Shown: positions 34,036-58,365 of the stretch, one piece after another
How positions within the stretch are numbered: the first letter of the stretch is position 1
How the letters are laid out: every line of letters begins with the position of its first letter
Virus record (IMG/VR): IMGVR_UViG_3300010938_000950
Span: 62,001 to 126,000 of that record
DNA: 64,000 nt
Strand: one strand, 5' to 3'
Made by a program: the position numbers and the translations under genes
Notes under the pieces: model-generated
Told to the model about the DNA's origin: nothing
The model's input: the letters and a program-made list of their open reading frames with translations, nothing else
The model's database searches: none

Positions 34036-36315
34036 TTAAGGTACTAGTGGGGGCCCGCCCCAAAAAATATACATTCCCCTTCGCATATGCTGAAAAGAAC
34101 GATTAGTATCGTGTGTTAACGTATATTCTCCAAAATTAGTTCTTCCTTCCCTTATATGCGGAATAGTTCCTATAAATCTTGCTTCTGTATTTGGAAAACC
34201 TACCCCACCTCCCCAATCGTTAACAGTGCCCCCTATCACATCTACAGATAATAATTCAGTTGCTCCTAACCAAGGATTATCTCCTGCGCTTCCATCAAAC
34301 ATAGGACTTCCGCCTTGCCCTACTCCGGAAACATACGTTAATAGAGATACTCCCGCTGATATTGGAACAGGGGTGGTAGTATTTTCATTTGCTTGCATAC
34401 TAACACCCTGGGAACGATTATTAATAGTAGTTGAAGTACCAAAAAGCCAACTACCATCATTTAAACTATTACCACTGCTTGATCCTAATCCACTTCCTAT
34501 ACAGTATAGTCGCGCTTCGTTATTCGCTGGAATTAGTGGCGGCTCAACTTCTGGCATACCAAATGATACATAAAATGATTTGGGATCGGTTGCATTTCCT
34601 GGCCTACGCCCAAACATTGTAACACCTAATCCATATCCATCATCTCCAATTATAGTATGTCTATATGAAATTGATGTTAGTGTACTAGTGTCTCCGCAAC
34701 CGGGAGCGCCACCAATATAAATGCTACTGTTACTATTATAATATAGTGGCGTATGTAAATGTCTACCAGCTACTGGAAAATCTCCGGCCGCATCACCACC
34801 AAATCCTGGTATGAAGGTAATTGGTGCACAGTTGCTTTGATCTGTATTTGTTTCATTGCAAATTCTAACCTGCCATCCAGTAGAGTTTGGGCTTTGTAAA
34901 ATTACACGTGGTGTAGTAGAATTACCATTGCCCCTGTACGACCCCGAAGGACTACTATTTACTGCTCCATTAGCTGGGGCATTAGCATCGCTGGCATATA
35001 AATACCAATTCATACTATCTGTAGGCTCAATTGGCGGCAAACTTGGAGAGTAGAAAACAGCTCCGCCAGTACTCATAACACCAGTACCGCCTGTACATCC
35101 TGTAAATGTAGTTGCCGTAATTCCAGTATATGATACTTGCTGTACGCCTGCTGCTGTGGTTACGAAGACAGTTCCAGATGGTGCAAATCCGGCACGGACA
35201 GCACCGCCAGTGGTCATTAATCCAGTACCGCCCGTACATCCTGTAAATGTAGTTGCGGTAGTTCCTGTATATGATACTGTTTGAGTGCCAGTGCTAGTGG
35301 TAACAAAAATAATACCAGTAGTAGGAAATCCAGTAGTTGAAACTACGTTAATAGTGCCTTGTGGTAATCTAACGTTATTGGATCCTGAAGCAATAGTTGT
35401 ACTTGCTGTATTTGTAGAAGCCACGTTAATGGTGGCCTGAGGTAAAGATTGTCCGTTAGAACCGGCGGCAATTGTGGTAGCTACTCCTGCTACAACCTGT
35501 GAACCACCAAGTATACTTCCGCTGCCTCCTGTACATCCTGTAAATGAGGTTGCAGTTGTACCGGTATAATTAACTGTTTGCCTGCCTGCTGGAGAGCATA
35601 TAAATATAGTTCCGCTCGTAGCAAATCCAGTAGTAGAAGTGACGTTAAGTGTAGCTGTAGGTAATGAGATACTAGCTATAACAGAGTTACCAGTAGACAT
35701 AGTGCCAGTACCTCCAGTACAACCTGTAAAAGTAGAGCCTGTAGTACCAGTATATGTAACTGTTTGTGTTCCAGCATTTGTAGCAACTAAAATGGTTCCA
35801 GATGTTGGGAAACCAGAAGTCGAGGCTACGTTAATGGTTCCTGTTGGTAAGGAAACGTTATTGGAAGCAGCGGCAATTGTGGTTGTACCACTAAGAAATG
35901 TACCAGTTCTATAGTTTATACGATAAGAGTTTGTGCTTGTATCATATCCATCAATAAGAAAACAACCAGAATTATATTGTGGATTAGTTGTGCTTCTTAA
36001 AACTAATAATCTGCCAACATCAACTTGACTAACTACTCTAGTGGCGACTGGAATAGAAACAAAGAACTCTTTTCCTGAACTTAAATTAATGCCAGCCCTA
36101 GTTCCTGCTGCGAAAGTTGGTGTGGCGGCTGTAGGAGTAGAGTCCGCTGTTGAAATTAATAAAGTACCAACTGAATTAATATTAAAATTAGTATCACCTA
36201 CATAAGTGTAAAGCAAAACTCTACGCAAAAAAATAGCCATTAAATAGGAAGGTATCCATTTCCTATTTGTACTAGTATCTTGTATTACGTAGTCTCTGAG
36301 TAAATGTCTTGCCAT
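34036..36315 (-). CDS. Virion-type scaffold X protein carrying 4 A modules (one nested)
   Basis: Close paralog of 36836 outside the inserts. Confidence 0.75.
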   Translation of the reverse strand: MARHLLRDYVIQDTSTNRKWIPSYLMAIFLRRVLLYTYVGDTNFNINSVGTLLISTADSTPTAATPTFAAGTRAGINLSSGKEFFVSIPVATRVVSQVDVGRLLVLRSTTNPQYNSGCFLIDGYDTSTNSYRINYRTGTFLSGTTTIAAASNNVSLPTGTINVASTSGFPTSGTILVATNAGTQTVTYTGTTGSTFTGCTGGTGTMSTGNSVIASISLPTATLNVTSTTGFATSGTIFICSPAGRQTVNYTGTTATSFTGCTGGSGSILGGSQVVAGVATTIAAGSNGQSLPQATINVASTNTASTTIASGSNNVRLPQGTINVVSTTGFPTTGIIFVTTSTGTQTVSYTGTTATTFTGCTGGTGLMTTGGAVRAGFAPSGTVFVTTAAGVQQVSYTGITATTFTGCTGGTGVMSTGGAVFYSPSLPPIEPTDSMNWYLYASDANAPANGAVNSSPSGSYRGNGNSTTPRVILQSPNSTGWQVRICNETNTDQSNCAPITFIPGFGGDAAGDFPVAGRHLHTPLYYNSNSSIYIGGAPGCGDTSTLTSISYRHTIIGDDGYGLGVTMFGRRPGNATDPKSFYVSFGMPEVEPPLIPANNEARLYCIGSGLGSSSGNSLNDGSWLFGTSTTINNRSQGVSMQANENTTTPVPISAGVSLLTYVSGVGQGGSPMFDGSAGDNPWLGATELLSVDVIGGTVNDWGGGVGFPNTEARFIGTIPHIREGRTNFGEYTLTHDTNRSFQHMRRGMYIFWGGPPLVP

Positions 36316-36323: not shown

Positions 36324-36839
36324 TTATTGAATCCATCGTCCAACTATTTTAATATCTATTAATGGATTTCCAGATGGTGGAGTGTAGAAAATTCCTAAAT
36401 CTACATTTGGTGGGCTGCTGTTTGGGTTAATCGGCAAGCTACCAGGAGTATTAAATAATTCTGGTCGTGGCACTATATTTTCTGCAATTACCCAAGTTTC
36501 ATACGAACTAGTATTTGGGTTGTATCCGGATACTTTATAGTAGATAGTTTGATCCTTAGGATGTGTCAAAATGGGGTTATTATCTACTTGTATAGATTGT
36601 GGCGCCAGAATTGGCCTGGTATCAAAATTAGTAGTAATTCCATTGTATACTTGATCTCCGGCAGATCCTATAATGTTGTTTACATTGACGGCATCATAGT
36701 TGCTAGCTAAACCACCATAATCTTGCAAAGATGATCCTCTCGCCAGATCAAAATCGGCACTGGCAAAAGTATTGGCTTGTCCACCAAAATTTTCACTAGA
36801 TCCAAAGTTGGTAATTGTTAAATCAAAAGCATAGCTCAT
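36324..36839 (-). CDS. Structural-cluster protein Z2 with YYK..Y..W module
   Basis: YYKVSGYNPNTSSYETW...PPSGNPLIDIKIVGRW; start moved to ATG 36839 (ATGA overlap). Confidence 0.7.
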   Translation of the reverse strand: MSYAFDLTITNFGSSENFGGQANTFASADFDLARGSSLQDYGGLASNYDAVNVNNIIGSAGDQVYNGITTNFDTRPILAPQSIQVDNNPILTHPKDQTIYYKVSGYNPNTSSYETWVIAENIVPRPELFNTPGSLPINPNSSPPNVDLGIFYTPPSGNPLIDIKIVGRWIQ

Positions 36840-38596
36840 GGTATTGTTTGTGGTCCATTCCAAGTAACGTAAACTCCTCGCTTTAAATGCATCCAACTAT
36901 GGTTGGCTTCGGTTGTTATCGAGAAGTTTCCAAAGTTTGATCTTCCTGCTCTTAAATGTGGTATTGTTCCTAGTATTCTGGGTTCTAGTGGCATTGAAGC
37001 TTCAATGCCTGCATTTCCATTCCAAGTGTTAAATGTACCAGCTATTAAATCTACAGAGAATAATTCTGTACTTAAACTCCATGGACTATCTGCTGCACTA
37101 CCATCAAATATTGGACTTCCAAATTGTCCAACACCGGATACATAAGTCCATAGGGACGGTGCACAACTACAAATAATTCCTCCTTGAGTTTGTGTTACTC
37201 CTTGCAGAAACGGGTTATGATTTGCATCACCAAAGCTACCAGCATAAATAATTCCAGGAGTCCAGGTAATATCATTTAGATTATCACCAAATCCGTTATT
37301 TCCTCCCGTGCTAAGACTGCTGCCTAGAACAAATAATCTTGCTACATTATTAACTGGTAATGGCAGTGGTTCATTTTCTGCTAAACCGAATGACGCAATA
37401 TAATTTTTTGGTCTTCCAGCATTGGATGGGTCTCGCCAGAAGCGGCTAAAAATAACTACACCCTGCCCAGTGTCGTCTCCAACTAGTGTTATTCTAAATT
37501 GCATCTGTTGATATTGTGATGGACTGTATGGAATACCGAATGATCCGGAATCGTCCCCAAATCCAGGAGCCATTCCTACATATTTAGTGGTGTTATTTGT
37601 GTTGTACCATAATGGACCATGCAGGTGCGGGCCTGCAACAGCAAAATCACCTGCTGAATTGCCGCCAAATCCTGGTATAGCTGTGATTAAAGGAACATTT
37701 CCATAATTACCATTGGTTTGAATATTTTGACTATAATCAGCAAAAGTCTCATGGCATAATCTTACTTGCCAACCCAATGAGTGTGGACTTTGTAAAATTA
37801 TACGCGGTGTAGTGGAGTTACCATAACCGCCATATGTACCATTGTTAACGCCCACCCAAGTACTATTTGGCGCACCTGATGTTGGAGTTAAAGTTTCAGC
37901 AGCATATAGATACCAGTTCATGCTATCGTATGGTTCAACAGGTGGATATCCCGTAGCCCCCATTGTTCTGTAGTCAATTATGTAACAGTTTGTTACTACA
38001 GTTCCTCCGCCAGCATATGCTCCATTACCCGTTGTTCCATTGAGCGTAAATTGCGTATTATTTAATACAGTAATGGTAAAAGTTCCATTAGCATTCGTGT
38101 TTCCAGTAACTCCCGAAATAGTTACTGTTTGTCCTGTAGTTAGGGCATGTGGTGCTGTAGTTGTTACCTGTATCGGGGAAACAGCATTGCCTGAGGTGGT
38201 AGACACACTATAGTTAAGCGCTTCAAAACCAGTAATTAAAAATATACCAGAATTGAATGTAGAGTTGGCTGTACTTCTTAATACCAGCAACCTGCCTACG
38301 TCAGAAAAACTAACAGTCCTTACTGAAGGAGGAACCCATACATAAAATTCTCTTCCGGTACCTTGATTAATACCAGCTTTAGTACCCACTGCGAAAGTTG
38401 GAGATCCTGTAGGCGTAGAGTCTGGAGTAGCAATTAACAAAGTTCCTACAGCGTTGATAGGATAGTTTGTATCACCAACATAACTATACAAAAGTATTCT
38501 TCTTAAAAAGATACTCATGAGATAGCCTGGTACCCACTGCCTACTAGCCGTAGTGATATTTTGAGTAACATAATCTCTAACTGTGTGTATAGCCAT
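36836..38596 (-). CDS. Virion-type scaffold X protein carrying 1 B module
   Basis: Paralog of 34036 and 29547. Confidence 0.75.
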   Translation of the reverse strand: MAIHTVRDYVTQNITTASRQWVPGYLMSIFLRRILLYSYVGDTNYPINAVGTLLIATPDSTPTGSPTFAVGTKAGINQGTGREFYVWVPPSVRTVSFSDVGRLLVLRSTANSTFNSGIFLITGFEALNYSVSTTSGNAVSPIQVTTTAPHALTTGQTVTISGVTGNTNANGTFTITVLNNTQFTLNGTTGNGAYAGGGTVVTNCYIIDYRTMGATGYPPVEPYDSMNWYLYAAETLTPTSGAPNSTWVGVNNGTYGGYGNSTTPRIILQSPHSLGWQVRLCHETFADYSQNIQTNGNYGNVPLITAIPGFGGNSAGDFAVAGPHLHGPLWYNTNNTTKYVGMAPGFGDDSGSFGIPYSPSQYQQMQFRITLVGDDTGQGVVIFSRFWRDPSNAGRPKNYIASFGLAENEPLPLPVNNVARLFVLGSSLSTGGNNGFGDNLNDITWTPGIIYAGSFGDANHNPFLQGVTQTQGGIICSCAPSLWTYVSGVGQFGSPIFDGSAADSPWSLSTELFSVDLIAGTFNTWNGNAGIEASMPLEPRILGTIPHLRAGRSNFGNFSITTEANHSWMHLKRGVYVTWNGPQTIP

Positions 38597-38605
38597 ATCG
38601 ATTCC

Positions 38606-41600
38606 TTATATAATGTAGAACAAGCTAGATGGAAGTATTGTATTATCCCAAATAATGGCAATACCATTTTGAGTATTTAAGAATTGGCCAGTTGCTGTAC
38701 CAAATCTGTGATAGAGTGGCAAGGTAGTTCCTGTAAACTTTAATGTTCTTAATTTAACTCTACCCAAAGAATATTGTCCGGTTACTCCTGGTAGTGATAA
38801 TACACCATCTGAAGCTAGTACTGTACCTCTTGTAGTATTAAATGTTAATCTAATATCAGTTAAGTTAGACCCAAATGTTGGAGTACCATCTCCGCCTAGT
38901 GACTTAGCAAGCATTCTATAAGTTCTTATGGTGCCAGTTGTATCTTTCATAACGAATCCATTACCGATAGTTCCGCTGTTACCGCTAGTTCCGTCGCATC
39001 TAAATACTGAACCGTTAAATACTCCACCTCTACTTAATACTGCCACAGGATTTGTATCAGCGGCTTGAGTATAAAGTCTTATTGGAATTTCACAATGTAG
39101 ATACGAGGATGCATCACCACTGTTTACATCTTTGAAATGCATCCAGAAAAATGCAGGATCGGCAGCCATAGTCATAGCCATAGTGTTTGCTGGAATACCG
39201 TTGAAAATACCTCCACTTTGACTAGTAAACTGTGTTGTAGCATCTGTTTGAGGATCTCCTGTTACTGGGAAAGTAAGTCCATTCCAGTTGCCGCCTGGTG
39301 ATATAATGGTTCCAATAGTACCCGCAGTATCGTTGCCAAATAACTGTATTTGACTATTGGCTTGCCCTGGATTTATTCCAATGGATGAAGGATTGAACTG
39401 CATAACCATATAGTTACCGTTACCGCTACTGAATGTTTGAGCAAGACCAGCATCTACTATTCTGTAATTAATATTACTTCTTTGAGTAAATGACGGGTGC
39501 AAATTAGTTGGGTCTGGTGTTCCGCCAGTATTCAAATTAATTCTGATAGAATTTGGACTATTTACGGCTGTAATTATGTAAATACTATCTTCTGTAGTTC
39601 CAGAATTTGGCTTCCACATAATCAATAGCTTACCTACCATATTGCTAGTTGTAACAGTTTGAGTGCCGCCACTTGTCCATGAGCCGTTTGGAGTAGAGTT
39701 GTTTAATATAATACTATTACGATTGGCAATTGAGCCACCGCTGGTATAAGCACCACTAGCAATTGTACCATTTAGTGTTGCAACTCTATTACTAATTACT
39801 GTTGTTAATGCTGTAGTGTTAGCGTTTGGTAAACCATTAATACCAGATGTTATTACAGTTTGTCCAGTTAATAGTGTATGGAAATCAGATGTAGTAATGG
39901 TAATTGGTGACAGTATAGTATTACCAGTAGTCATAGCTCCGGTACCGCCAGAACATCCTGTAAATGTTGTGGCAGTAGTTCCTGTGTAGGATACAATTTG
40001 GTTTCCGGTACTGGTCATAATTGTAAATGAACCAGTTTGTGCAAAACTAATAAACACAGGATTACCTGTAGTCATAGTTCCGGTGCCGCCAGAACATCCT
40101 GTAAAAGAAGTGCCCGTGGTACCAGTATACGTTACAGGTTGATATCCGGTAGTTGTTAATACATATATGTAACCGCTAGTTGGGAAACCTGTAGTTGAAG
40201 CTACGTTAATAGTAGCTTGTGGCAGTACTTGTCCACTGGATGCGACTGCAATTGAAGTGTAATTGCTAGCTGGAGAGAAGGCTGTGAACACCGATCCGCC
40301 AGCAGAAGTGCTTCCCGTACCACCTGAGCATCCAGTTAGTGATGTGGCACTTACGCCAGTATAATTTATTAGTTGAGAACCGGCTGAGGTAGTAATGTAC
40401 AATGAACCGGCAGTTGGAAAATTAGTAAAAAATCCAGTGTTATTTACTGTGTTGCCAGTAAACATAGTTCCGAATCCGCCCAATGCACCAGTGAAGGAAG
40501 TGCCGGTTACACCAGTATAGGTAACTGTTTGATTGAATGGTCCGCCGCCAATTGGAATACCAATCAACAGAGTACCAGTTCCGCCCGTACATCCTGTAAA
40601 TGAAGTTGAAGTTAGTCCCGTATAAGAAACCGAAGTGGCCGCATAAACAACACCACCAGTTGACATGGTTCCACCACCACCAGAACATCCAGTGAAGGAA
40701 GTTCCTGTGGTACCCGTGTATGTGACTATCTGTGCACCAGAGCTTGTTGTTACATAAATAGTTCCAGAAGCCGCAAATCCTACTGTCGAGGCTACGTTAA
40801 TAGTGCCTTGTGGTAATGCCTGTCCGTTGGAGCCGGCAGCGATAGTTGTTTGAATAGAGTTGTCTGCTACACTGAGAGTTCCGCTAGTTGGAAATCCATT
40901 AGTAGTAGATACATTAATAGTTGATTGAGGTAATGATTGACCACTAGATCCTAGTGCAATACTAGTTACTACTGTAGTGGCAATATTTAATGTACCTGTC
41001 GTTGGAAATCCGGTAGTTGAAACTACGTTAATCGTACCGGTTGGCAATGCGATATTGTTAGATCCTGATGCAATGGTCGTACTTGCCGTTGCTGTGGCGG
41101 CTACGTTGATTGTAGCTGTTGGTAATGCTTGAATGCCAGTAGTGGTTGTGAAAGGTGCAGCAGTATTTGCATTAACAGTTGCCTGTGGCAAAGATGCTCC
41201 ATTCGATGGAAAACCAGTTGTGGTATTAAAGTATGTTGCATTGGAAATATTGTTAGTTGGGGTGGTAATTATCCAAGTTCCATTGGCAGTTGTATTTCCA
41301 GTGACGCCACTTACTACAACAGATCCTAAATTAGAATAAGAGTTCGCGGCCGTCATATTAACTGATATTGGTGCAGTTACTGCCCCACCAGTTGACATAG
41401 TGCCAGTACCACCAGAGCAACCAGTAAAGGTTGTTCCTGTAATACCGGTATAAGTAACTGTTTGTACACCACCGCTAGTCGTAACGTTAATTGTTCCACT
41501 GCTTGGGAATCCGATGGTGACAGTACCACCAGTTTGCATGGAACCACGTCCTAGAGTACATCCAGTAAAAGTAGTGGCCGTAATACCTGTGTACAGCACT

Positions 41601-42373
41601 TGTTGGATGCCTTCAGTAGTTTGTACATTTAAATATCCACCAGAAGGAAAACCAGTAGTGGATGCTACGTTGATAGTACCAGTAGGTAGTGAAACGTTGT
41701 TAGAAGAGGCTGCGATGGTTGTGCTAGCGGTTGTAGTAGAAGCAACGTTTATGGTAGCCTGAGGTAAAGATTGTCCGTTAGATCCCGCAGCAATAGTAGT
41801 TCTGTAATTAGAAACATTGTTAATTGTAAAGCTAGTAGCGGCACTTGTAAATGGATTGACATTGGTTGCACTGAAAACAGCATCCCCACTGACAGACGTA
41901 CTAACCTGAGCAGCAGTGTATCCATCATTTCCGATTGCTAAAACAGGGGTTCCTTCTGTAAAATTAACTGGCCATGCGAATGGGGTAGTATTAATGACAC
42001 CGCCGCCAGTATACGATCCATTTCCAGTTGATCCGTTTAAGCTAAATGTGGTTGTAGAAGTAACTGTAATTTGAAAAGTTCCGTTAGCGGCCAAATTTCC
42101 TAATACTCCAGAAATTGTAACTTGTTGTCCAGTAAATAGTGCGTGAGTTGTTGTAGTAGTAATAACGATTGGAGATACGCCAGCGCCTGTGGTATTTGAT
42201 ACGTTGTATGAAATGCTCATGGTGTTTGCAAATCCACCAGGCGTTTGCAAGCCGGTTCCACCATTAACGCAGTATCCCCAGAACTCATAGAGTACTTTTA
42301 AGAACTCGGAGGCTCTTCCAGTTTGGTTATAATTGTAAAATAGTCCTCGACAGAACCTTAGTGAAGTTGGCAT
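38606..42373 (-). CDS. Virion-type scaffold Y protein with a ~730-aa nested insert (8 A and 3 B modules in total)
   Basis: Paralog of 32085; see findings. Confidence 0.75.
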   Translation of the reverse strand: MPTSLRFCRGLFYNYNQTGRASEFLKVLYEFWGYCVNGGTGLQTPGGFANTMSISYNVSNTTGAGVSPIVITTTTTHALFTGQQVTISGVLGNLAANGTFQITVTSTTTFSLNGSTGNGSYTGGGVINTTPFAWPVNFTEGTPVLAIGNDGYTAAQVSTSVSGDAVFSATNVNPFTSAATSFTINNVSNYRTTIAAGSNGQSLPQATINVASTTTASTTIAASSNNVSLPTGTINVASTTGFPSGGYLNVQTTEGIQQVLYTGITATTFTGCTLGRGSMQTGGTVTIGFPSSGTINVTTSGGVQTVTYTGITGTTFTGCSGGTGTMSTGGAVTAPISVNMTAANSYSNLGSVVVSGVTGNTTANGTWIITTPTNNISNATYFNTTTGFPSNGASLPQATVNANTAAPFTTTTGIQALPTATINVAATATASTTIASGSNNIALPTGTINVVSTTGFPTTGTLNIATTVVTSIALGSSGQSLPQSTINVSTTNGFPTSGTLSVADNSIQTTIAAGSNGQALPQGTINVASTVGFAASGTIYVTTSSGAQIVTYTGTTGTSFTGCSGGGGTMSTGGVVYAATSVSYTGLTSTSFTGCTGGTGTLLIGIPIGGGPFNQTVTYTGVTGTSFTGALGGFGTMFTGNTVNNTGFFTNFPTAGSLYITTSAGSQLINYTGVSATSLTGCSGGTGSTSAGGSVFTAFSPASNYTSIAVASSGQVLPQATINVASTTGFPTSGYIYVLTTTGYQPVTYTGTTGTSFTGCSGGTGTMTTGNPVFISFAQTGSFTIMTSTGNQIVSYTGTTATTFTGCSGGTGAMTTGNTILSPITITTSDFHTLLTGQTVITSGINGLPNANTTALTTVISNRVATLNGTIASGAYTSGGSIANRNSIILNNSTPNGSWTSGGTQTVTTSNMVGKLLIMWKPNSGTTEDSIYIITAVNSPNSIRINLNTGGTPDPTNLHPSFTQRSNINYRIVDAGLAQTFSSGNGNYMVMQFNPSSIGINPGQANSQIQLFGNDTAGTIGTIISPGGNWNGLTFPVTGDPQTDATTQFTSQSGGIFNGIPANTMAMTMAADPAFFWMHFKDVNSGDASSYLHCEIPIRLYTQAADTNPVAVLSRGGVFNGSVFRCDGTSGNSGTIGNGFVMKDTTGTIRTYRMLAKSLGGDGTPTFGSNLTDIRLTFNTTRGTVLASDGVLSLPGVTGQYSLGRVKLRTLKFTGTTLPLYHRFGTATGQFLNTQNGIAIIWDNTILPSSLFYII

Positions 42374-42393
42374 TTATTCTCCGTTTAACCAAA

Positions 42394-42406
42394 ATGTCGT
42401 ATTATT
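42394..42406 (-). promoter_or_regulatory. Candidate phage promoter motif
   Basis: Minus strand aataa tacg acat, 20 nt before the start at 42373. Confidence 0.45.
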
Positions 42407-42412
42407 GCGTGT

Positions 42413-43372: not shown

Positions 43373-43374
43373 GA

Positions 43375-45038: not shown

Positions 45039-45045
45039 TCATGCC

Positions 45046-46533: not shown

Positions 46534-49482
46534 ATGAGTAATTATCCCTTTAGTTTCGACAACAATATCACTCTACCTGGAGTTTCTGGAAGTTCGCAGG
46601 AAGATGTAGCTATTACTGCTCTGAGAAGTGCAGTTTTTGCTATTGAAACCGAGCTTGGAATTACTCCAAGCGGAATTTATCCCGATGTTAGAACTAGATT
46701 AGATATTTTAGAATCTAGAATTCAATTTGGAGTTTCTCCTCAAATTCCAAATGATGGTTATGTAAAAAGTCCTTTATATATTTGGAATGTCCCGCAAAAT
46801 ATAGTTTTAAGCATTAGCGATGGATATGGGGCACCTACCGAAAATAGACTAGACGGCTCTCTCTATATGAGAGGCGGGGATGGCTATGCCAATAATCAAC
46901 TTTATGTTAGACTAAATGGTCAATGGTATCCTGTACAAACTGAACAATTTACCGCAGCTAATGACTTAGCTGGGTATCCACCTGGTTCAGATGGACATTT
47001 AGCACAGACAGTTATTGGATTATATAATCATCCATTTAATACTACCATGGACACCGTGGGCGCCGTAGAAGATGGCTATCACGTTACCTGGAATAATATT
47101 TTAGGAATGTGGGAAGCTCAAACTGGATTTATTCCAGGTCGCGACCTCATGGCATTTTCTGGTCCTTACGGACGTACTGGTCAACAAGTTATTGGCCTTC
47201 AAGGTTTCCCTCTCTCAGGATTCCCTCCAACTGATGGATACACGCTAGTTTGGCAGGCGTCTGATAATCGTTGGGAACCACAAGCACGCGCTGTCATATT
47301 TGACGGGTACGTTGCTCGTGTCAACTTACGTTCCAACCGCGCTCAACAATCACCAATTTTAAACACCAAAACTGGAATTGTAAACTTTGGAACTGATACG
47401 AGCGGGCTGACTCTCGGAGCCACCAATGACTACGCTATAATTTTAGGTGGTGACCGAAATCTTTCATCTGGAATTCACTCCATCGTTGTAGGTGGTTTTG
47501 CTGGCAATTCTTCGGATGGTTACGCTCTTATTATTAATGGAAATTCCAACACAGCATCCGCCCAATATGCTACAGTTGTTAACGGAACTACCAATGCCGC
47601 TAGCGGTATACGATCATTAGTATTACACGGAACTTCCAATATAGCTTCTGGTGCTAATTCCTATATAGGTAACGGCGCTAGCAATACAACAGCGGCCAAT
47701 TTTTCTGCCGTACTAAATGGATCTTCTAATAGTATCTCTTCAGGATCTACCCATGCAGCAATCGGATTTGGTAATCTAAATCAAATAACGGGCGGCGCAG
47801 CTTCACAATTCTCTATCATCCTTGGCGGAACTACCAACGTTATTTCTAGCGCTGAAAATGTTCTCATCGGAGTTCCAGACAGTTCTGATTCAGCGGCCCC
47901 ACACTCTATTTTACTATCCGGTGTAAATAATTCAATTCTTACACTGTCTGATTACTCAGCTATTTTAACTGGCACGAATAACACAATAAATACGTCTTCA
48001 GAATATGGATTTATTGGAACTGGTCAAAATAATAATGCTACTGGCCATTTTTCTACTATCTTAAATGCAGATACTTCCACGGTAAATGGACAACACGCTA
48101 CGGTTCTAAAAGGTCTTAGTAATAGTGCAACCGGACAGCATTCCACCATTATTAATGGAAATAGTAACACCATAAATAGTGCCGGCTGGAGTATTATTCT
48201 AGATGGTTATAATAATTCTGTAACCGGCACAGGATCATTTATTGCAGATGGTTACAACAATAGTGTTTCCGGATTCTTTTCATCTATTCTGAATGGTAAT
48301 TTCAATATTATTGCGGGTAGAAATAGCACCATCATGAATGGTACTGGCAATAATATAGACACTAATAGTGCTGAAAGTGCTGTTATTTTAGGAAATAATA
48401 ATACGTTTGTCAACTCAACCAATGCACTTGTAACCGGTACTGGTAACGTACTAACAAATGCATCGCAGCAATTTGTATTGGGAGCTAATAACAGTACTCA
48501 ATCAGCCTTCTCATTTATCAATGGCAGTTTGAATACACTGGCAACGGGTTCAGCATTCAATAGAATTTTCGGTTCAAGTAATACACTGGGAGCAAATGCT
48601 TCTACCAATTTTATTATGGGCAGCTCCAATATTGTGGGACCAGCTAACGCTACATCAAATACAGTTATTTTAGGAACCAATAACCTTGTAGATAATTCTA
48701 GCGCAGCCTATGTGAGAGGATCTAGTAATATCGTAAGTTCTAATTTTGGTTTTGTAGACGGTCAGTTTGGTAAATCAAGAATGTTTGGCCAAGGAGTAAT
48801 GTCCAATTCTAGATTTACTGCAACCACAATCGCTGCCGGTTCCAATGGTCAAAGTTTACCACAAGGCACTATTAACGTAGTTTCCACGGCCGGATTCCCA
48901 TCCAGTGGATCAATAGCTGTCATTACTTCACTTGGTTTACAGTCTGTTACCTATTCTGGTACAACTGGTACCAGCTTTACAGGCTGTGCTGGCGGTAGTG
49001 GTGTTATGTCTACTGGTAATGCTGTAGGTAAGATTGGTGAAGTCCAATGGTCGCGCTTGGTATTGACTGGTAGATCAACTGGTGGAGCTGCAATTCCATT
49101 ACAATTACAAGATACAGTTGCTGCTAACCCAACCTTCGTTGATGGTTATTCTTATGATTTAAGTATCAAAGTTCTTATCGTTAATACTTCGCCAATCACA
49201 CCAAATCCAGTGGTTCCAGCAAGATATCACATAGATGTTCTTGCACATCAAGAAAGTGGTGTGTTGGTGTTGGATAATATCAATTATACATTGTCTACGC
49301 CTAACACAGTAGATAGTATATTTAGAACGCCTTGGACCGTTACGATTTCTACTAACGGCGCAAACCAAATGTTAGTAACAGTTGATGTTGAAGCGCTTAC
49401 CTCTTACGTACAACCAAGCAATACACCTTCTGATAGAAGAGCAATTGCTACAATTGAAATGCGAGAAATTTCGAGACTATAA
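46534..49482 (+). CDS. Fibre/adhesin-like protein with ~15-aa beta-solenoid repeats (YadA-head-like) and one A module
   Basis: N.A.G..S.I.NG..N repeats; N-terminus paralogous to 45046. Confidence 0.7.
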   Translation: MSNYPFSFDNNITLPGVSGSSQEDVAITALRSAVFAIETELGITPSGIYPDVRTRLDILESRIQFGVSPQIPNDGYVKSPLYIWNVPQNIVLSISDGYGAPTENRLDGSLYMRGGDGYANNQLYVRLNGQWYPVQTEQFTAANDLAGYPPGSDGHLAQTVIGLYNHPFNTTMDTVGAVEDGYHVTWNNILGMWEAQTGFIPGRDLMAFSGPYGRTGQQVIGLQGFPLSGFPPTDGYTLVWQASDNRWEPQARAVIFDGYVARVNLRSNRAQQSPILNTKTGIVNFGTDTSGLTLGATNDYAIILGGDRNLSSGIHSIVVGGFAGNSSDGYALIINGNSNTASAQYATVVNGTTNAASGIRSLVLHGTSNIASGANSYIGNGASNTTAANFSAVLNGSSNSISSGSTHAAIGFGNLNQITGGAASQFSIILGGTTNVISSAENVLIGVPDSSDSAAPHSILLSGVNNSILTLSDYSAILTGTNNTINTSSEYGFIGTGQNNNATGHFSTILNADTSTVNGQHATVLKGLSNSATGQHSTIINGNSNTINSAGWSIILDGYNNSVTGTGSFIADGYNNSVSGFFSSILNGNFNIIAGRNSTIMNGTGNNIDTNSAESAVILGNNNTFVNSTNALVTGTGNVLTNASQQFVLGANNSTQSAFSFINGSLNTLATGSAFNRIFGSSNTLGANASTNFIMGSSNIVGPANATSNTVILGTNNLVDNSSAAYVRGSSNIVSSNFGFVDGQFGKSRMFGQGVMSNSRFTATTIAAGSNGQSLPQGTINVVSTAGFPSSGSIAVITSLGLQSVTYSGTTGTSFTGCAGGSGVMSTGNAVGKIGEVQWSRLVLTGRSTGGAAIPLQLQDTVAANPTFVDGYSYDLSIKVLIVNTSPITPNPVVPARYHIDVLAHQESGVLVLDNINYTLSTPNTVDSIFRTPWTVTISTNGANQMLVTVDVEALTSYVQPSNTPSDRRAIATIEMREISRL

Positions 49483-49910
49483 TGGCAACAACAGTTAGAA
49501 CAACTAGAACATTAACCATGCCCGATATGTCGGACAGGTACCCAAGCAACAATCCTCCTGACGGCTATATTATTACTTTTAGTGGAGCCGATGGTTATTA
49601 TTTAGCTAAACCATTGTCTAGAATTTTAGCAATTAGTAGTCCAACTTCTCCATATACTCCAACAACTGAAGATGTTGTTTTAGTTCCAAATCACGTTGGT
49701 GTTTTTACAATTAATTTACCACTTGGTCAAACTCCTGGAAAAACTTTTTATATTAAAGATTTTGGTGGGGTTGCAGCAGCCAATAACATATTGGTTTCTG
49801 GAAACGGTAATAATATTGATGGCGCACCAAGCCAAACAATTACTTCAAATTTCGGTGGATTACAGGTAATTTGGAGTGGGGCCAGTTGGGCAATTATTTC
49901 GAACATCTAA
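49482..49910 (+). CDS. Small fibre-associated protein with one INLP..GK.F.IKD.G...NNI.V.GNG.NIDG module
   Basis: Module shared with 21444 and 49979. Confidence 0.7.
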   Translation: MATTVRTTRTLTMPDMSDRYPSNNPPDGYIITFSGADGYYLAKPLSRILAISSPTSPYTPTTEDVVLVPNHVGVFTINLPLGQTPGKTFYIKDFGGVAAANNILVSGNGNNIDGAPSQTITSNFGGLQVIWSGASWAIISNI

Positions 49911-49949
49911 TATCTTCAAAATTCTACGCATTTAGAATAACGATAATCT

Positions 49950-49962
49950 AATAAAGAGACAT
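49950..49962 (+). promoter_or_regulatory. Candidate phage promoter motif
   Basis: aataa agag acat, 16 nt before ATG 49979. Confidence 0.45.
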
Positions 49963-49978
49963 CTCTCTAGGAGATTCT

Positions 49979-52900
49979 ATGGCAATACAGTACTATATGC
50001 GAGCCTACAATACAACTTTGTCCCAATATGTGGACTGGGTTGTAAATGATGCGCCAGACAGTATAGGAACTTTTTCTGGTTACCCAACTAACCAACTAGT
50101 CAATATTACTGTTAATAGAGTAGTACAGTCAAAAGTTGAGAATTTTCTAAAACCGAACCAATCTTTAGGTGGTACGGACGGCCTCTTCTTCCACGTTAAT
50201 AGTTACGATTGGCGAAATGCTGTTACCCCTATTCCCCCTCCTACCAGCTATACTGGTTTTCAGATTGAAAGAGGCGTAAATTTCGTCTCTAATATTACAT
50301 CGGCCTCCAATACTGCACCTATTACGATTACGACATCTTCCAATCATAATTTAGTAACTGGCCAAATTGTAACTATTAATGGAGTTTCTGGTAACGTAGC
50401 CGCTAATGGTAGCTGGCCCATTGTAGTTACTGGTTTAACCACTTTTACCCTAACCGGTTCTGTAGGTTCAGGAAATTCTGTTGTTGGTGGTAGTGTTTTT
50501 ACTCCGAGAGATATGTCTTCCCTTATTTGGGATGAACTGGGTGATATCTGGAGATTTGTTTTAAATACCAATGGTGATGGAACTTCTCTCGGAGCATCAC
50601 AATCTCTCAGCGTTAATAATCTACTTGTTGATGGTTTTCTGGCCCTTGGTTCTGACCCGGCTGATACTGGAATTATCAGAATTCCAAATAATCAATATAT
50701 CTTTTCTGAATCTAATCCAAGTGGAACTGATGTTCAACTAATTGGCGCTGATTTATTTAATAGAATTAAACTCGGAAGTACAGTAACTGATATTGTTTAT
50801 ACTCCAGGTGTTGTAGTAGTTGATGGATACGTGCAGCATGATGGAACTAGTGGAAATATCGCTGCTTCAACTGGATTTATTCGTGAGCAAAATAATACGA
50901 CCATAGTTGCATTCAAGAATGTTAATCAGTCATTTTCTGACATAGCGGCATTATCATCAAATTCATTTAATAATATAGTAATAGGCGATACAGTTAATAC
51001 GGGCACCATTCATAATACAGCCAGTGGTGTATTTAATATCACCGCTGCCACTGCCGCTAGTCCAGTTCAGATTACAGTATCTGCTCCAACTACTTTCGTT
51101 ACCGGACAAAGTGTTACGATCAATGGAATCACTGGTACCATCGGAACCGATCCAACTAATGGATTAAATGGTAAAACATTTGCAATTGTAGTATTGAGCC
51201 CAACTCAATTTACACTTACTGGATCTAACGGTACGGGATTAGCTTACACCAGTGGTGGTACAGTCACTACAAATAACGTTCATTCATTCCAGGTAGGTGG
51301 AACAACTCAAGTCGAAATTGGTGCTCCTTTTGTTAGATTTCCGTCTGGAATTACTTCACCATTCATCTATCAGCTTCCGGCTGCCCCAAGCACTAGCGGA
51401 CAAAATCTAACTATTCAATCTCAGAATGCTGGATTAGGCGGATCCAACGGTGGTAATTTAACTCTAACAACCGGTACTGGTACAACTAATGGTATCATTA
51501 ATTTACAGACTGGTGGAGTAACTAGAATAACATTAAGCGATACAACCGAAACTCATATTCATCAAATAATTACATTTGCTAATACTGTCGCTAACCCAAT
51601 CATTACCCAAAATACCGCAACTGCTGCTGCTGGTACTACGCTAACTGTACAGGCACAAGCAACTTCATTAGCCGCTTCTGCTGGCGGTAATTTAGCACTC
51701 AGCTCTGGAGCTGGCACATCTCAGTCTGGAAATGTATTCATTCAAACTGGAGGAACTACACAAATTGTTGTTTCCCCTTTGACTATCGCCCCAAGTGATG
51801 CAACTTTCGGTCCACCAACCAGCGGAACAGTTATCATTAAAGGCAATTTAGAAGTTCAAGGAGCAATGACTACCGTAGAAAGTACGGTTGTTGATATAAT
51901 TGGTAGAGTCATCCACGCTAATTGGGCAGATCCAATTGGATCTCCAAACGTTGCTCGTCCAACACAAAATGTTGGCTATAGCATCCATAGAGGCAACGTA
52001 GGTGGCCAGCCACGTGATGGTGCTGCTTGGATATGGACTGAAGGCGCACTTGATGGCGGAGCCGATGGTTATTGGAGAGCTGTAACTATCCATGGTGATG
52101 GCTATGGAACTGATAACTTCAATATTACAAACTCTATAAGTGCTGTTGGAGTAATGGGCAATGACTTTGTTGCAAGTTCTGACCCTGCACCTGTTTTAGG
52201 TTATATTGCCGCTAGTGGAAGTTTGAGAACAGCTAATAATGTTCCAGTAGCTGTTTCTAGAGACATCACAGCAACCACAACGGTCACCGCAGCCTCAAAC
52301 TTAGCTACGCTGCCTCAAGGAACTATAAACGTAGTTTCAACTGCTGCATTTACTACCTCTGGAACATTGCTAGTTCTATCATCAACTGGTGTTCAAACTA
52401 TTACCTATACTGGTACGACCGGAACAAGTTTTACGGGATGTGTTGGTGGTACTGGTACAATTATTACAGGTAGTATTGTTGGTCAAACTAATAATAGCAC
52501 TACTATTGCTGCTCCATCCAACGGACAAATACTTCCTCAAGGAACAATTAACGTAGTTTCAACCACCGGATTCCCTCAAGCCGGAACTCTGCGCATTTAT
52601 ACCACTACTAGCACGGGTGGTATTCAGAATGTGTCGTACACAGGTACCACTGCTACCAGCTTCACCGGATGTACTGGCGGTACCGGAACTCTAAATACTG
52701 GAAATATTGTAACTAGTATTCCTGCAACTGGAACTCAAGATTTAGTCCTACTGGGAACTGACTTCGGTAATCGTATTCTTCATGGAGCGCCAACCAGTAA
52801 TGCTGGTCATATCTTTAATACGACCACTGGATCTATTTATGACTTCCAGATTAATAGTGTATCTCAGGTTCAACTAAGGGGTGATACTGACGTAGATACA

Positions 52901-54673
52901 TTCACTAAGACTATTACTATTGCCCCAACAGTCAGTAATCCAAAGATTTATCAGATAGTCCGTCCAGACACTGGAGCCAATAATGGCTTCAACATGATGC
53001 TCCATGCTCAAGATGGACAGCAACAAACTGGTGCCAATGCTAATAACAATGGTGGTTTGTTAATTCTATCTTCTGGTACTGCAGGTACTGGAGGATCTGG
53101 TGCTGCTGGTACTGATGGTTACGTAGATATCAGAACTGGTGTAACTACTAAGATTAGAGTATTCCCAACAGATGCTGCTCCGCCTGGTCCAAGCACTAAC
53201 GATAATAGTATTCTCTATTTTGAAAATCTATTTAGAGTAGATACTGCACAGCTTACCCCACTATTTAGACAGGATGACACGGCAACCGCTACTGGACAGT
53301 CTTACACTATTCAGGCACAGAATGCAACCACTACAGGTGGCGCTCTAGTATTAACTTCCGGAACTGGTGCAACCACTGCTGGTGATGTTCAAATTAGAAC
53401 AGGTGGTGTTGATAAGGTAATTGTTCATCCAACGTTTACTGAATTTAGGGATACGGCAGAGGCGTTGCGTGTCACTCCAGTTTCTGCTGGTACTACACAG
53501 ATTACCTACGCAGCCACTGTAACATCTGCACAAATTAACCAGACTCAAACAGCTTCCACACCAAGCGCTCCGATGACCATTCAGTCTCAGGTTACAACTG
53601 CGGCATCAGGTCAGGGCGGAAACCTAATTCTAATTGCTGGTAACGCAACTGGCACTACTTCCACTGGCGGTAATGCTATATTAACTTCCGGAACTGGAAC
53701 AACAGTTGCTGGAAATACTCAGCTACAAACTGGTGGTGTTGATCGTGTTGTTGTACATCCAACATTTACGGAGTTTAGAGATGCCGCTGAAGCTGTACGC
53801 ATTACTCCAGTTTCTGCCGGCACCACACAAGTTACATTTGCATCCACAGTAACTGCTGTTTCTTTCAATCAGACTGCAACAGTTGGTGCTACAGGCGCTC
53901 CTTGGACAATCCAAGCACAAGCCGGAGCTTCAGGAACTGGTGGAGATATCTCTATCATTGCAGGAAATGCTACTACAACAGGTGGAGACGCCATTATTAC
54001 ATCTGGTACTGGTGCTACAGCCGGAAATGTTCAACTACAAACTGGCGCGGTAGATCGTGTAGTAGTTCACCCAACATTTACTGAATTTAGAGATACCGCT
54101 GAAGCTTTGCGTGTCACCCCGGTATCCACTGGCACCACTTCTGTTCAGTTTGCATCAACTGTATTATCTTCCAGAATATTCCAAGCAGACCTAACTACTG
54201 CTAGTGGAGTTGGAGCAACTCTGACTGTACAAGCTCAGAATGAAACTGGTGCAACGTCTACCGGCGGAAGTTTGAATCTAACTTCTGGAACTGGTACTTT
54301 GATGGATGGGTACACCAACCTACAAGCTGGTGGCTCCACCGTTGCAAGTGTCCATACTGATAAGTTTATCTTTGCCAAAGGATGGAGAAGAAACGTATCT
54401 ATGATCTCCAGCAGTGGAACGTACAATGTTTTGGATATGGACGATTATATTGCGGTAGTCAGCTTGTCTGCGGCATTCCAAATCAATTTACCAGCTTCTC
54501 CGATGATAGGCGATACATACGAAGTCAAAGACACCACCGGAAATGCAGTTACTTTCAATATCACCATATCTGGTAACGGTAAAAACATTGACGGTGCTGG
54601 TACATTTGTACTCACTCAAGCATACGCATCTGCCGCCTTTACATACACTGGTACGCAGTGGAGTGTGACATAA
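49979..54673 (+). CDS. Large mosaic tail-fibre-like protein (2 B, 2 A, ~7 TIQAQ..GG.L.LTSGTG repeats)
   Basis: 1564 aa, Thr/Gly-rich; HPTFTEFRD.AEA.R.TPVS.GTT three times. Confidence 0.75.
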   Translation: MAIQYYMRAYNTTLSQYVDWVVNDAPDSIGTFSGYPTNQLVNITVNRVVQSKVENFLKPNQSLGGTDGLFFHVNSYDWRNAVTPIPPPTSYTGFQIERGVNFVSNITSASNTAPITITTSSNHNLVTGQIVTINGVSGNVAANGSWPIVVTGLTTFTLTGSVGSGNSVVGGSVFTPRDMSSLIWDELGDIWRFVLNTNGDGTSLGASQSLSVNNLLVDGFLALGSDPADTGIIRIPNNQYIFSESNPSGTDVQLIGADLFNRIKLGSTVTDIVYTPGVVVVDGYVQHDGTSGNIAASTGFIREQNNTTIVAFKNVNQSFSDIAALSSNSFNNIVIGDTVNTGTIHNTASGVFNITAATAASPVQITVSAPTTFVTGQSVTINGITGTIGTDPTNGLNGKTFAIVVLSPTQFTLTGSNGTGLAYTSGGTVTTNNVHSFQVGGTTQVEIGAPFVRFPSGITSPFIYQLPAAPSTSGQNLTIQSQNAGLGGSNGGNLTLTTGTGTTNGIINLQTGGVTRITLSDTTETHIHQIITFANTVANPIITQNTATAAAGTTLTVQAQATSLAASAGGNLALSSGAGTSQSGNVFIQTGGTTQIVVSPLTIAPSDATFGPPTSGTVIIKGNLEVQGAMTTVESTVVDIIGRVIHANWADPIGSPNVARPTQNVGYSIHRGNVGGQPRDGAAWIWTEGALDGGADGYWRAVTIHGDGYGTDNFNITNSISAVGVMGNDFVASSDPAPVLGYIAASGSLRTANNVPVAVSRDITATTTVTAASNLATLPQGTINVVSTAAFTTSGTLLVLSSTGVQTITYTGTTGTSFTGCVGGTGTIITGSIVGQTNNSTTIAAPSNGQILPQGTINVVSTTGFPQAGTLRIYTTTSTGGIQNVSYTGTTATSFTGCTGGTGTLNTGNIVTSIPATGTQDLVLLGTDFGNRILHGAPTSNAGHIFNTTTGSIYDFQINSVSQVQLRGDTDVDTFTKTITIAPTVSNPKIYQIVRPDTGANNGFNMMLHAQDGQQQTGANANNNGGLLILSSGTAGTGGSGAAGTDGYVDIRTGVTTKIRVFPTDAAPPGPSTNDNSILYFENLFRVDTAQLTPLFRQDDTATATGQSYTIQAQNATTTGGALVLTSGTGATTAGDVQIRTGGVDKVIVHPTFTEFRDTAEALRVTPVSAGTTQITYAATVTSAQINQTQTASTPSAPMTIQSQVTTAASGQGGNLILIAGNATGTTSTGGNAILTSGTGTTVAGNTQLQTGGVDRVVVHPTFTEFRDAAEAVRITPVSAGTTQVTFASTVTAVSFNQTATVGATGAPWTIQAQAGASGTGGDISIIAGNATTTGGDAIITSGTGATAGNVQLQTGAVDRVVVHPTFTEFRDTAEALRVTPVSTGTTSVQFASTVLSSRIFQADLTTASGVGATLTVQAQNETGATSTGGSLNLTSGTGTLMDGYTNLQAGGSTVASVHTDKFIFAKGWRRNVSMISSSGTYNVLDMDDYIAVVSLSAAFQINLPASPMIGDTYEVKDTTGNAVTFNITISGNGKNIDGAGTFVLTQAYASAAFTYTGTQWSVT
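53290..54330 (+). repeat. Tandem ~100-aa coding repeats (three close copies)
   Basis: VHPTFTEFRD at ~53425, ~53755, ~54065. Confidence 0.85.
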
Positions 54674-56410: not shown

Positions 56411-56419
56411 CTGATTACC

Positions 56420-57067: not shown

Positions 57068-57075
57068 GTATTATC

Positions 57076-58025: not shown

Positions 58026-58167
58026 AGAACAATCCACCTATAAATCCAGCAACGCCAGCCACAAAACCTAGCCAGCAACCAAATTTTACACCAGAATAGA
58101 GCGCTTCAGCCATGACCAGCCCAAAGAACATCCAGGCTAGTGATTTCCATAATTTGCATCTGTTCAT
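57988..58167 (-). CDS. 59-aa two-TM membrane protein (not in ORF track)
   Basis: Read manually: MNRCKLWKSLAWMFFGLVMAEALYSGVKFGCWLGFVAGVAGFIGGLFYGKFRKRTCSIS*; ATGA overlap. Confidence 0.6.
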   Translation of the reverse strand: MNRCKLWKSLAWMFFGLVMAEALYSGVKFGCWLGFVAGVAGFIGGLFYGKFRKRTCSIS

Positions 58168-58358: not shown

Positions 58359-58365
58359 AATAACC

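What the first reader, a model, noticed from the sequence alone, without database searches (positions are those of the whole stretch)
48817..52712. Modules A and B also occur in unrelated fibre genes on the opposite strand
Seen: one A interrupts 46534 between SNSRF and KIGEVQWS (~48817-49026). 49979 has two tandem A (~52268-52712) and two B (~50291-50500, ~51031-51270). The modules therefore cross gene families and orientation. Known or recalled: B resembles the E1-FCCH-like beta domain, and A resembles the ITYTG.T.TSFTGCTRG domain of large-phage structural proteins. Nearly every A keeps one Cys (FTGC), which could cross-link subunits or be modified.
Basis: partly seen in the sequence, partly recalled or inferred. 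Interest (0 to 1): 0.6.

Follow-up and report, generated by a model that had tools for sequence, protein, structure and literature searches.

The report
Insertable beta-barrel modules in phage fibres
Two small, self-folding protein modules have been inserted into, and lost from, surface loops of several unrelated tail-fibre and baseplate-like genes of a huge uncultured phage, and one of them is even inserted into copies of itself up to five shells deep.

Summary
The window is part of a jumbo-phage contig. Gene 46534-49482 (P0001, 982 aa) carries one module A. Gene 49979-54673 (P0002, 1564 aa) carries two B and two tandem A. The same modules fill five genes on the minus strand.

With the modules masked, the carriers fall into four unrelated scaffolds. 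B is a Pfam E1_FCCH domain, already known as an outward-facing decoration of phage tail tubes. A is an unnamed ~70-residue six-stranded beta-barrel (AlphaFold pLDDT 97.6). It has no Pfam or PHROG model but matches about 2,500 protein clusters.

Among 61 P0001 orthologues, 17 have A at the window's site, 39 have none with seamless flanks, and 5 have it in another loop. One A-free orthologue, P0026, lies in a fully syntenic locus. P0002 homologues also vary in both A and B.

The copies are old: synonymous sites are saturated and the copies group by position, not by genome. The conserved Cys behaves like a buried core residue, not a cross-linker.

New here: the partial A copies are halves of whole modules split by other A modules, nested like brackets.

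Verdict: a real feature and a new variant of a known kind. The modules' function, decoration or spacer, is inferred.

The parts
46534..49482 (+). P0001, 982 aa. Fibre/adhesin-like protein with a long UspA1-head-like beta-roll and a C-terminal domain that hosts module A.
   Evidence: ORF. PDB sequence match to UspA1 head 3pr7, E 7e-11. Pfam LbR_Ice_bind beta-roll. 61 orthologues.
48823..49026 (+). Module A inserted in P0001 between NSRFTA and GKIGE. It holds the only Cys of the protein (C818).
   Evidence: HMM E 1.9e-38. Empty site in the syntenic orthologue P0026. Cys count.
49482..49910 (+). Small conserved ORF (142 aa) between the two fibre genes, function unknown. Included only as a conserved neighbour.
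   Evidence: ORF. A 136-aa gene sits at the same place in L004 and L005. No Pfam hit.
49979..54673 (+). P0002, 1564 aa. Large fibre-like protein with two B, two A and C-terminal ~110-aa repeats.
   Evidence: ORF. Module scan. 48 homologues matching both flanks of the A pair.
50285..50509 (+). Module B1 (E1_FCCH-like), P0002 aa 103-177.
   Evidence: Pfam PF16190. B HMM 104 bits. Absent in homologues P0153, P0152, P0149 and P0135.
51029..51277 (+). Module B2 (E1_FCCH-like), P0002 aa 351-433.
   Evidence: B HMM 90 bits. Cleanly absent in P0146, P0138, P0148 and P0151. An A sits at about this site in P0179.
52274..52483 (+). Module A1 of P0002, aa 766-835, with Cys C821.
   Evidence: HMM E 8.5e-36. 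Positional orthologues form one clade, and many of them have A or V instead of Cys.
52496..52714 (+). Module A2 of P0002, aa 840-912, with Cys C898.
   Evidence: HMM E 4.7e-37. The whole A pair is absent, with seamless flanks, in P0193, P0179 and P0171.
38606..42373 (-). P0003, 1255 aa. Carrier of 8 A and 3 B; 59% of its residues are modules. Nests at window 41375-41803 (two shells) and 39911-41230 (up to five shells).
34036..36315 (-). P0004, 759 aa. Four A modules (window 35053-35889), the last two nested.
32085..34028 (-). P0006, 647 aa, paralogue of P0003. One B and two nested A (window 33084-33503).
29547..32084 (-). P0005, 845 aa, paralogue of P0004 and P0007. Two tandem A (window 31485-31898) and two or three B.
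36836..38596 (-). P0007, 586 aa, paralogue of P0004 and P0005. A single B between the core blocks where P0004 carries four A and P0005 carries nothing.

Best explanation
A and B are two unrelated, autonomously folding ~70-residue beta-barrel domains. They act as insertable cassettes in the host-recognition proteins of a ~490-kb phage lineage.

Shown:
- Each module is a complete in-frame unit that sits in a loop of an otherwise unrelated scaffold.
- The same loop can be empty, hold A, or hold B in orthologues and paralogues.
- Module content has changed several times in the history of both fibre genes.
- The copies are ancient and kept by purifying selection. They are not recent DNA repeats.
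- A also inserts into three loops of itself, giving bracket-like nests.

Inferred:
- New copies arise by rare illegitimate in-frame recombination or duplication. They survive because the barrel's two ends lie side by side, so a loop can take it without disturbing the host fold.
- On the virion the barrels project from the fibre or baseplate surface as decorations or spacers. They add reach and weak multivalent binding to the host surface, as proposed for Ig-like and FCCH decorations of other phages.
- The nests form stiff stacks of barrels.
- The single conserved Cys is a buried core residue.
For: - Module identity and significance.
- B is PF16190.
- Scaffolds are unrelated once modules are masked.
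- P0001 orthologues: 17 with A at site 1, 39 without, 5 with A at site 2. The A-free P0026 lies in a syntenic locus. The 204-nt in-frame insert is clean.
- P0002 homologues lack B1, B2 or the A pair, and one has A at the B2 site.
- Paralogues hold nothing, one B, or four A between the same core blocks.
- At least 4-6 state changes on host-protein trees.
- Age and selection: median pS 0.66, minimum 0.49, mean pN 0.28 over 190 pairs. Copies cluster by position, not by genome.
- Nesting: spliced halves give single full-length matches of 65-111 bits. There are 143 balanced pairs against 73.9 after shuffling, 0 of 2000. Break points cluster at HMM 24-29, 36-41 and 50-54, which are loops of the model. 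AlphaFold of the 448-residue nest gives pLDDT 84.7 and pTM 0.61, with strands running from outer into inner modules.
- Cys substitution spectrum and co-variation.
- FCCH as an outward-facing decoration of tail tubes: PMC13576161.
Against: - Nothing here is experimental. The folds are predictions and no virion or binding data exist, so the decoration/adhesion role is an analogy.
- In the three closest relatives (68-86% identity) every module is at the same site. Turnover is therefore slow, and 'mobile' is meant only on an evolutionary scale.
- No insertion mechanism is visible: there is no target duplication or terminal repeat at the P0001 site.
- Gain and loss counts rest on short or mosaic alignments. 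The whole-protein and C-terminal trees disagree (10 against 6 changes), so recombination of gene segments may mimic repeated insertion.
- The P0002 homologues that lack the A pair are distant (40-46% identity) and may not be strict orthologues.
- The outer shells of the nest have lower confidence (pLDDT 55-86).
- The split-B reading in P0003 rests on only +6 bits.
Confidence: 0.75

Rival explanations
1. The modules are integral, ancestral parts of one common fibre fold. The carriers would be diverged homologues, and the 'modules' only their best-conserved repeats.
For: Close relatives keep every module at the same site. The modules make up a large share of some proteins, 59% of P0003.
Against: With modules masked, the scaffolds share no similarity across the four groups. 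Orthologues and paralogues lack the modules with seamless flanks or carry them at other loops. A folds confidently on its own.
Confidence: 0.03
2. A is carried by a selfish DNA element that inserts in frame into coding genes, in the manner of Rickettsia palindromic elements. The protein domain would be a by-product.
For: Clean, in-frame, repeated gain and loss at several sites and in many scaffolds. Three preferred break points inside A itself.
Against: Synonymous sites among the 20 copies are saturated while amino-acid change is low, so conservation acts on the protein, not the DNA. There are no terminal inverted repeats or target duplication at the P0001 junctions. Copies group by position across genomes, which means old events. 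The best DNA identity between copies is 75%.
Confidence: 0.07
3. The repeated modules exist as recombination substrates. Inverted copies in divergently oriented fibre genes would allow inversions or cassette exchange that switch host range.
For: Copies lie in inverted orientation across the 46.4-46.5 kb divergence point. The whole-protein and C-terminal trees of P0001 orthologues disagree, which suggests mosaic exchange.
Against: The arms are only 71-89% identical over 33-95 nt with saturated synonymous sites, which is poor substrate for homologous recombination. No recombinase was noted among the proteins scanned in this cluster. Gene order is identical in four independent contigs. Copies show no concerted evolution.
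Confidence: 0.05
4. The conserved single Cys makes A a covalent cross-linking or modified unit (disulfide, thioester or similar). That chemistry, not decoration, would be why A is kept.
For: The Cys is kept in 533 of 584 copies. It is the only Cys in P0001, and the two A cysteines are the only ones in P0002. An invariant Gln (col 41) lies on the neighbouring strand. Disulfide-stitched tail tubes exist in other phages (PMC13576161).
Against: Replacements are V, A, I, T, L and S. Cys loss co-varies with hydrophobic positions, not with Gln 41. Positional orthologues of P0002-A1 exchange C, A and V.
Confidence: 0.1

Closest known systems
E1_FCCH domain (Pfam PF16190) as an outward-facing decoration of siphovirus tail tube proteins (gp39 and gp13 of phages NBD2 and MED16; PMC13576161)
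   Same: Module B matches PF16190 above the gathering score. Like the published cases it is an add-on to a phage tail structural protein, variably present within a protein family.
   Different: Here B sits inside loops of fibre and baseplate-like proteins, up to three per protein. It alternates with an unrelated module at the same sites and may itself be split by inserted modules (weak). The fold of B was not modelled here.
P22 and CUS-3 coat protein I-domain, a six-stranded beta-barrel genetically inserted into the HK97 fold (PDB 2m5s; PMC11243222)
   Different: No sequence relationship was detected. The I-domain is a single, fixed insertion in a capsid protein. A is multi-copy, in many scaffolds, and self-nesting.
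Accessory beta-barrels of phage tail tips, baseplates and adaptors: Chi 8vjh_B, Mystique tail tube 9n71_B, GP4 8jov, JBD30 8rk3_o, lambda gpJ 8iyk_J, and SU10_adaptor PF24175
Ig-like domains scattered over phage structural proteins (Fraser et al. 2006; my own knowledge, not checked here)
   Same: Small beta domains, promiscuously added to unrelated virion proteins and variably present among relatives. Proposed to give weak binding to cell-surface carbohydrates.
   Different: A different fold. Ig-like domains are mostly terminal or tandem additions. A and B are loop insertions, and A nests in itself.
Nested domains of the T4 tail sheath gp18, where domain I is inserted in II and II in III (Aksyuk et al. 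2009, my own knowledge; insertions in sheath proteins noted in PMC9230969)
   Same: A Russian-doll arrangement of domains in a phage tail protein.
   Different: In gp18 the nested domains are of different kinds and go two levels deep. Here one and the same domain is nested up to five shells, and the depth varies between orthologues.

Membership tests
Pfam PF16190 E1_FCCH (module B) | Sequence match to the family model above its gathering score | tested here: met
   P0002 scores 35.1 bits against a cut-off of 29.5. P0005 57.7, P0007 37.9 and P0003 40.0 bits. P0006 at 25.4 is below the cut-off.
Pfam PF16190 E1_FCCH (module B) | [quoted passage not shown] | not tested
Pfam PF16190 E1_FCCH (module B) | Part of a ubiquitin-activating E1 enzyme | tested here: not met
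   The carriers have no E1 domains. As in phage tail tube proteins, only the barrel is shared.
Module A family (unnamed; profile A1) | Full-length match to the 71-column profile | tested here: met
   P0001 126 bits; P0002 118 and 122 bits. 2,492 clusters match in the 1.84-billion-protein library.
Module A family (unnamed; profile A1) | Autonomous six-stranded beta-barrel | tested here: met
   AlphaFold pLDDT 97.6 and pTM 0.85 from a 12-sequence alignment. This is a prediction only.
Module A family (unnamed; profile A1) | Covered by a curated family (Pfam, PHROGs) | tested here: not met
   No Pfam hit at E<=0.1 over the A regions and no PHROG. The nearest atlas clusters carry no family.
NHL-repeat beta-propeller (PknD / designed Pizza proteins) | ~40-residue blades that close into a propeller, with a significant per-blade match | tested here: not met
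   The PDB hit to Pizza6 (E 7.7e-10) is a sum over six identical designed blades, each with E about 1, and covers only A positions 5-42. AlphaFold folds A as a barrel.
EF-Tu domain-2 / F1-ATPase N-terminal / P22 I-domain type barrels | Fold-level superposition well above background | tested here: inconclusive
Shared origin of A and B | Profile-profile similarity | tested here: not met
   hhalign probability 0.4%, with 10 aligned columns.
In-frame selfish DNA elements (for example Rickettsia palindromic elements) | DNA-level conservation beyond the protein constraint; terminal repeats or target duplication | tested here: not met
   Median pS 0.66 and nucleotide identity at most 75%. Clean junctions without duplication.
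Covalently cross-linking adhesin domains (Cys-Gln thioester or disulfide) | Reactive Cys with an obligate partner residue, not replaceable by aliphatic residues | tested here: not met
   Cys is replaced by V, A, I, T, L or S in 51 of 584 copies. There is no co-variation with Gln 41. The chemistry itself cannot be tested here.

The most novel reading that the evidence does not exclude
Module A is a self-nesting protein domain. Whole copies have repeatedly been inserted into three loops of other copies, up to five shells deep and with depth varying between orthologues. The nest folds into a stiff stack of barrels joined by continuous two-stranded ribbons, which would give the phage a length-adjustable arm on its baseplate and fibre proteins. 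To my knowledge, and in one full-text search, recursive nesting of one and the same domain has not been described for phage proteins.
Probability: 0.5. Interest if true: 0.7.

Novelty: new variant of a known kind. Interest (0 to 1): 0.55.

Why it matters
Phage fibres and baseplates are known to evolve by shuffling parts, but the units and rules are mostly inferred from whole-domain swaps at gene ends. This lineage offers a clean natural experiment. Two defined 70-residue barrels occupy defined loops, and empty, A-filled and B-filled states of the same loop are all preserved in syntenic genes.

That has four uses:
- It shows which loops of these scaffolds tolerate cargo, which helps in engineering receptor-binding proteins.
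- It defines a large domain family without a name (about 2,500 clusters) that annotation pipelines currently miss in giant-phage structural genes.
- It shows that fragment-like repeat copies can be halves of intact nested domains, so such genes should not be read as decayed repeats.
- If the predicted rigid nests are real, they are a simple, evolvable way to build rods of graded length from one domain.

Tried and rejected
- Megablast and tblastn of the fibre genes and of the A pair against 50,697 phage records found nothing. The low-complexity filter may contribute. No isolate relative could be named.
- PHROGs has no family for P0001, P0002 or most carriers.
- The NHL/Pizza propeller likeness of the N-half of A was rejected as a summed weak match.
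- Common origin of A and B was rejected at profile level.
- A Cys56-Gln41 thioester-like pair was considered because both are near-invariant and should face each other across a hairpin. It was rejected because Gln stays when Cys is lost.
- The recombination-switch and selfish-DNA readings are treated under rivals.
- The 'moraphage' paper (PMC12619734) describes smaller (up to 307 kb) phages, and I found no link to this lineage.
- Cluster look-up gave no names for ten A-bearing proteins.
- The sequencing-run search found only small shares in groundwater, soil and river metagenomes. I do not name a habitat or host.
- My first automatic labelling of insertion sites mislabelled three site-2 proteins. 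It was corrected.
Full report
CONTEXT. The window is bases 62001-126000 of a 209,766-bp IMG/VR virus record that CheckV rates 49% complete. The same proteins occur on contigs of 340-498 kb, so this is a jumbo phage of roughly 490 kb. The window also encodes a TubZ/PhuZ-like tubulin, ribonucleotide reductase, PhoH, and UvsW- and DnaB-type helicases. Between 29.5 and 55.9 kb lies a block of large genes. Ten are on the minus strand (29547-46428). Diverging from them on the plus strand are P0001 (46534-49482), a 142-aa ORF, P0002 (49979-54673) and a 401-aa virion structural protein, phrog_1645, which is 44-47% identical to cyanophage proteins. Three tandem Laminin_G_3 (ConA-like lectin) genes sit in the block. 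P0001 has a long beta-roll like the head of the trimeric adhesin UspA1 (3pr7, E 7e-11). The block is therefore most plausibly the host-recognition apparatus. 'Fibre' remains an inference.

THE OBSERVATION.
- A in P0001: aa 763-832. By comparison with an empty orthologous site, the insert is window 48823-49026.
- B in P0002: aa 103-177 and 351-433.
- A in P0002: aa 766-835 and 840-912.

The minus-strand carriers are P0003 (38606-42373), P0004 (34036-36315), P0006 (32085-34028), P0005 (29547-32084) and P0007 (36836-38596, B only). One further A lies outside the window, at record 22990-24084. At DNA level the copies appear as direct and inverted repeats of 60-89% identity. After masking the modules, BLAST finds only two paralogue groups, P0003/P0006 and P0004/P0005/P0007. 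It finds no similarity of P0001 or P0002 to anything else. The modules do cross unrelated gene families and both strands.

WHAT THE MODULES ARE.
- B matches Pfam E1_FCCH above the gathering score in P0002, P0003, P0005 and P0007. This barrel is already known as an outward-facing add-on of siphovirus tail tube proteins, present in only part of that family (PMC13576161).
- A has no Pfam or PHROG model. A 12-copy alignment (A1) gives an AlphaFold model of pLDDT 97.6: a six-stranded barrel of 71 residues.
- Predicted viral structures match better, with TM 0.7-0.85 and 23-38% identity. Examples are a Synechococcus phage baseplate wedge protein, cyanophage structural proteins, Agrobacterium phage Atu_ph07 and Bacillus phage G. 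The ESM atlas adds the SU10 adaptor and baseplate-wedge clusters.
- The A profile matches 2,492 clusters of the 1.84-billion-protein library, 1,058 of them at E<=1e-10. Most matches are multi-copy, in proteins of 250-3,300 residues.
- A and B show no profile-profile similarity.
- A weak likeness of the N-half of A to NHL/Pizza blades is a summed artefact.

ARE THEY INSERTIONS?

For P0001, a word search with the C-terminal region returned 61 full-length orthologues. They fall into three states:
- 17 carry A exactly where the window does.
- 39 have no A, and NSRFTA runs straight into GKIGE.
- 5 carry A in another loop of the same domain, between HQES and LVLDN.

P0026 has no A yet is 86.6% identical in the C-terminal domain. 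It lies in a locus with the same gene order on both sides. At the nucleotide level the window has 204 extra in-frame bases and no target duplication.

For P0002, 48 homologues match both flanks of the A pair. B2 is absent in most of the more distant ones and B1 in several. The A pair is absent with seamless flanks in three. One of those three has an A at about the B2 site, and another has one near the N-terminus.

Inside the window's own genome, the paralogues P0005, P0007 and P0004 hold nothing, one B and four A between the same conserved blocks. On trees of the host protein with A removed, module state needs 10 changes (whole protein) or 6 (C-terminal 215 residues). At least 4 of these are forced by well-supported branches. 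The disagreement between the two trees points to mosaic exchange as well.

AGE AND MODE OF SPREAD. Among the 20 reconstructed A modules of this record:
- Mean amino-acid identity is 61% and mean nucleotide identity is 61%.
- The proportion of synonymous differences is saturated (median 0.66, minimum 0.49), while non-synonymous change is low (mean 0.28).
- In a tree with modules from orthologues, copies group by position: P0002-A1 clade SH-aLRT 94, P0001 site-1 clade 90, and site-2 copies elsewhere. They do not group by genome.

So there is no concerted evolution and no sign of a recently active DNA element. The three nearest relatives (68-86% identity) have all modules at the same sites. Turnover is real but slow, and I see no mechanism beyond rare illegitimate in-frame recombination filtered by selection. 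That last step is an inference.

NESTING. This goes beyond the finding. The many 'partial' A hits pair up like brackets.
- In P0003, aa 191-333 reads N-fragment (profile 2-26), a whole A, then C-fragment (25-71).
- P0003 aa 382-821 reads four N-fragments, a whole A, three C-fragments, another whole A and a last C-fragment. The break points are complementary in nested order.
- Joining each N- with its C-fragment in silico gives a single full-length match of 65-111 bits in all seven cases tested. Intact copies score 87-126 bits.
- Across 285 A-bearing proteins there are 143 balanced pairs, against 73.9 after shuffling the order (0 of 2000). With one protein per architecture the figures are 51 against 27.5.
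- Break points cluster at profile positions 24-29, 36-41 and 50-54. These are the three loops between strands 2-3, 3-4 and 4-5 of the model.
- Nest depth differs among P0003 orthologues.
- AlphaFold on P0003 aa 378-825 with 20 orthologues gives pLDDT 84.7 and pTM 0.61. Every reconstituted module has its six strands. Long strands (model residues 83-95, 121-134, 198-207, 230-242) run from an outer module straight into the inner one.

This suggests a stiff stack rather than beads on a string. P0003 thus holds eight whole A and three B, and 59% of its residues are modules. One B may itself be split by the A nest, but that evidence is weak.

THE CYSTEINE.
- P0001 has a single Cys in 982 residues, and P0002 has two in 1,564. 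All three are in A.
- In 584 full copies the column holds C 533, V 28, A 14, T 4, I 3, L 1 and S 1.
- Loss of Cys co-varies most strongly with profile positions M63, I18 and I4, and not with the near-invariant Gln 41.
- Positional orthologues of P0002's first A carry C, A or V.

This pattern fits a buried packing residue better than a cross-linking or modified one. Many Cys-less copies are positional orthologues, so these associations are not independent events. The chemistry remains untested.

VERDICT. The feature is real and the modular reading is supported. Shuffling of small beta domains among phage tail proteins is a known theme: Ig-like domains, FCCH on tail tubes, the P22 I-domain and the nested sheath domains of T4. 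New here are three things: the precise natural series of empty, A-filled and B-filled loops in syntenic genes, a large unnamed domain family, and the recursive self-nesting. I rate it a new variant of a known kind, interest 0.55.

Noticed in passing
window 39911-41230 and 41375-41803 (P0003); 35053-35484 (P0004); 33084-33503 (P0006): The partial copies of module A are halves of whole modules split by other A modules, nested like balanced brackets up to five shells deep. Depth varies among orthologues.
   Followed up: yes
window 46534-54673: P0001 has one Cys in 982 residues and P0002 has two in 1,564. All three are the conserved Cys of module A. Outside the modules both fibre proteins are Cys-free.
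   Followed up: partly
window 53349-54138: The C-terminal part of P0002 holds three or more diverged ~110-residue repeats (330-nt period, 70-74% DNA identity). Repeat number differs among homologues, which range from 883 to 2086 aa.
   Followed up: no
window 42413-45038 (-): Three tandem paralogous genes (319, 313 and 240 aa), each with a Laminin_G_3 / ConA-like lectin domain. They are conserved in the same order in relatives L002-L005.
   Followed up: no
genome record C1:22990-24084 (+), outside the window: A 364-aa protein with one module A at its N-terminus, followed by a very glycine-rich region. This is a fifth kind of scaffold for A.
   Followed up: no
window 4997-6355 (+): A tubulin/FtsZ-family protein with a TubZ-like C-terminal domain and a weak PhuZ PHROG hit. 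This is a hallmark of some jumbo phages.
   Followed up: no
window 55895-59409 (-): A nucleotide-metabolism cluster next to the fibre genes: DHFR, ThyX-type thymidylate synthase and an IMPDH/GMP-reductase family protein. It is syntenic in relatives.
   Followed up: no
window 17873-19186 (+): The PhoH-like ATPase is fused to an N-terminal PIN domain.
   Followed up: no
P0156 (homologue of P0002), aa ~752-918: At the A-pair site this homologue has two diverged A copies without the Cys (V in its place). They fall below the profile threshold, so A counts from the profile are lower bounds.
   Followed up: partly
P0179 aa 328-396 versus window 51029-51277: A homologue of P0002 carries an A at about the loop where the window's protein carries B2. 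One loop can therefore accept either module.
   Followed up: partly
window 49979 versus 49997: Public gene calls start P0002 six codons downstream (1558 aa, P0115) of the longest ORF (1564 aa). The true start is undecided.
   Followed up: no
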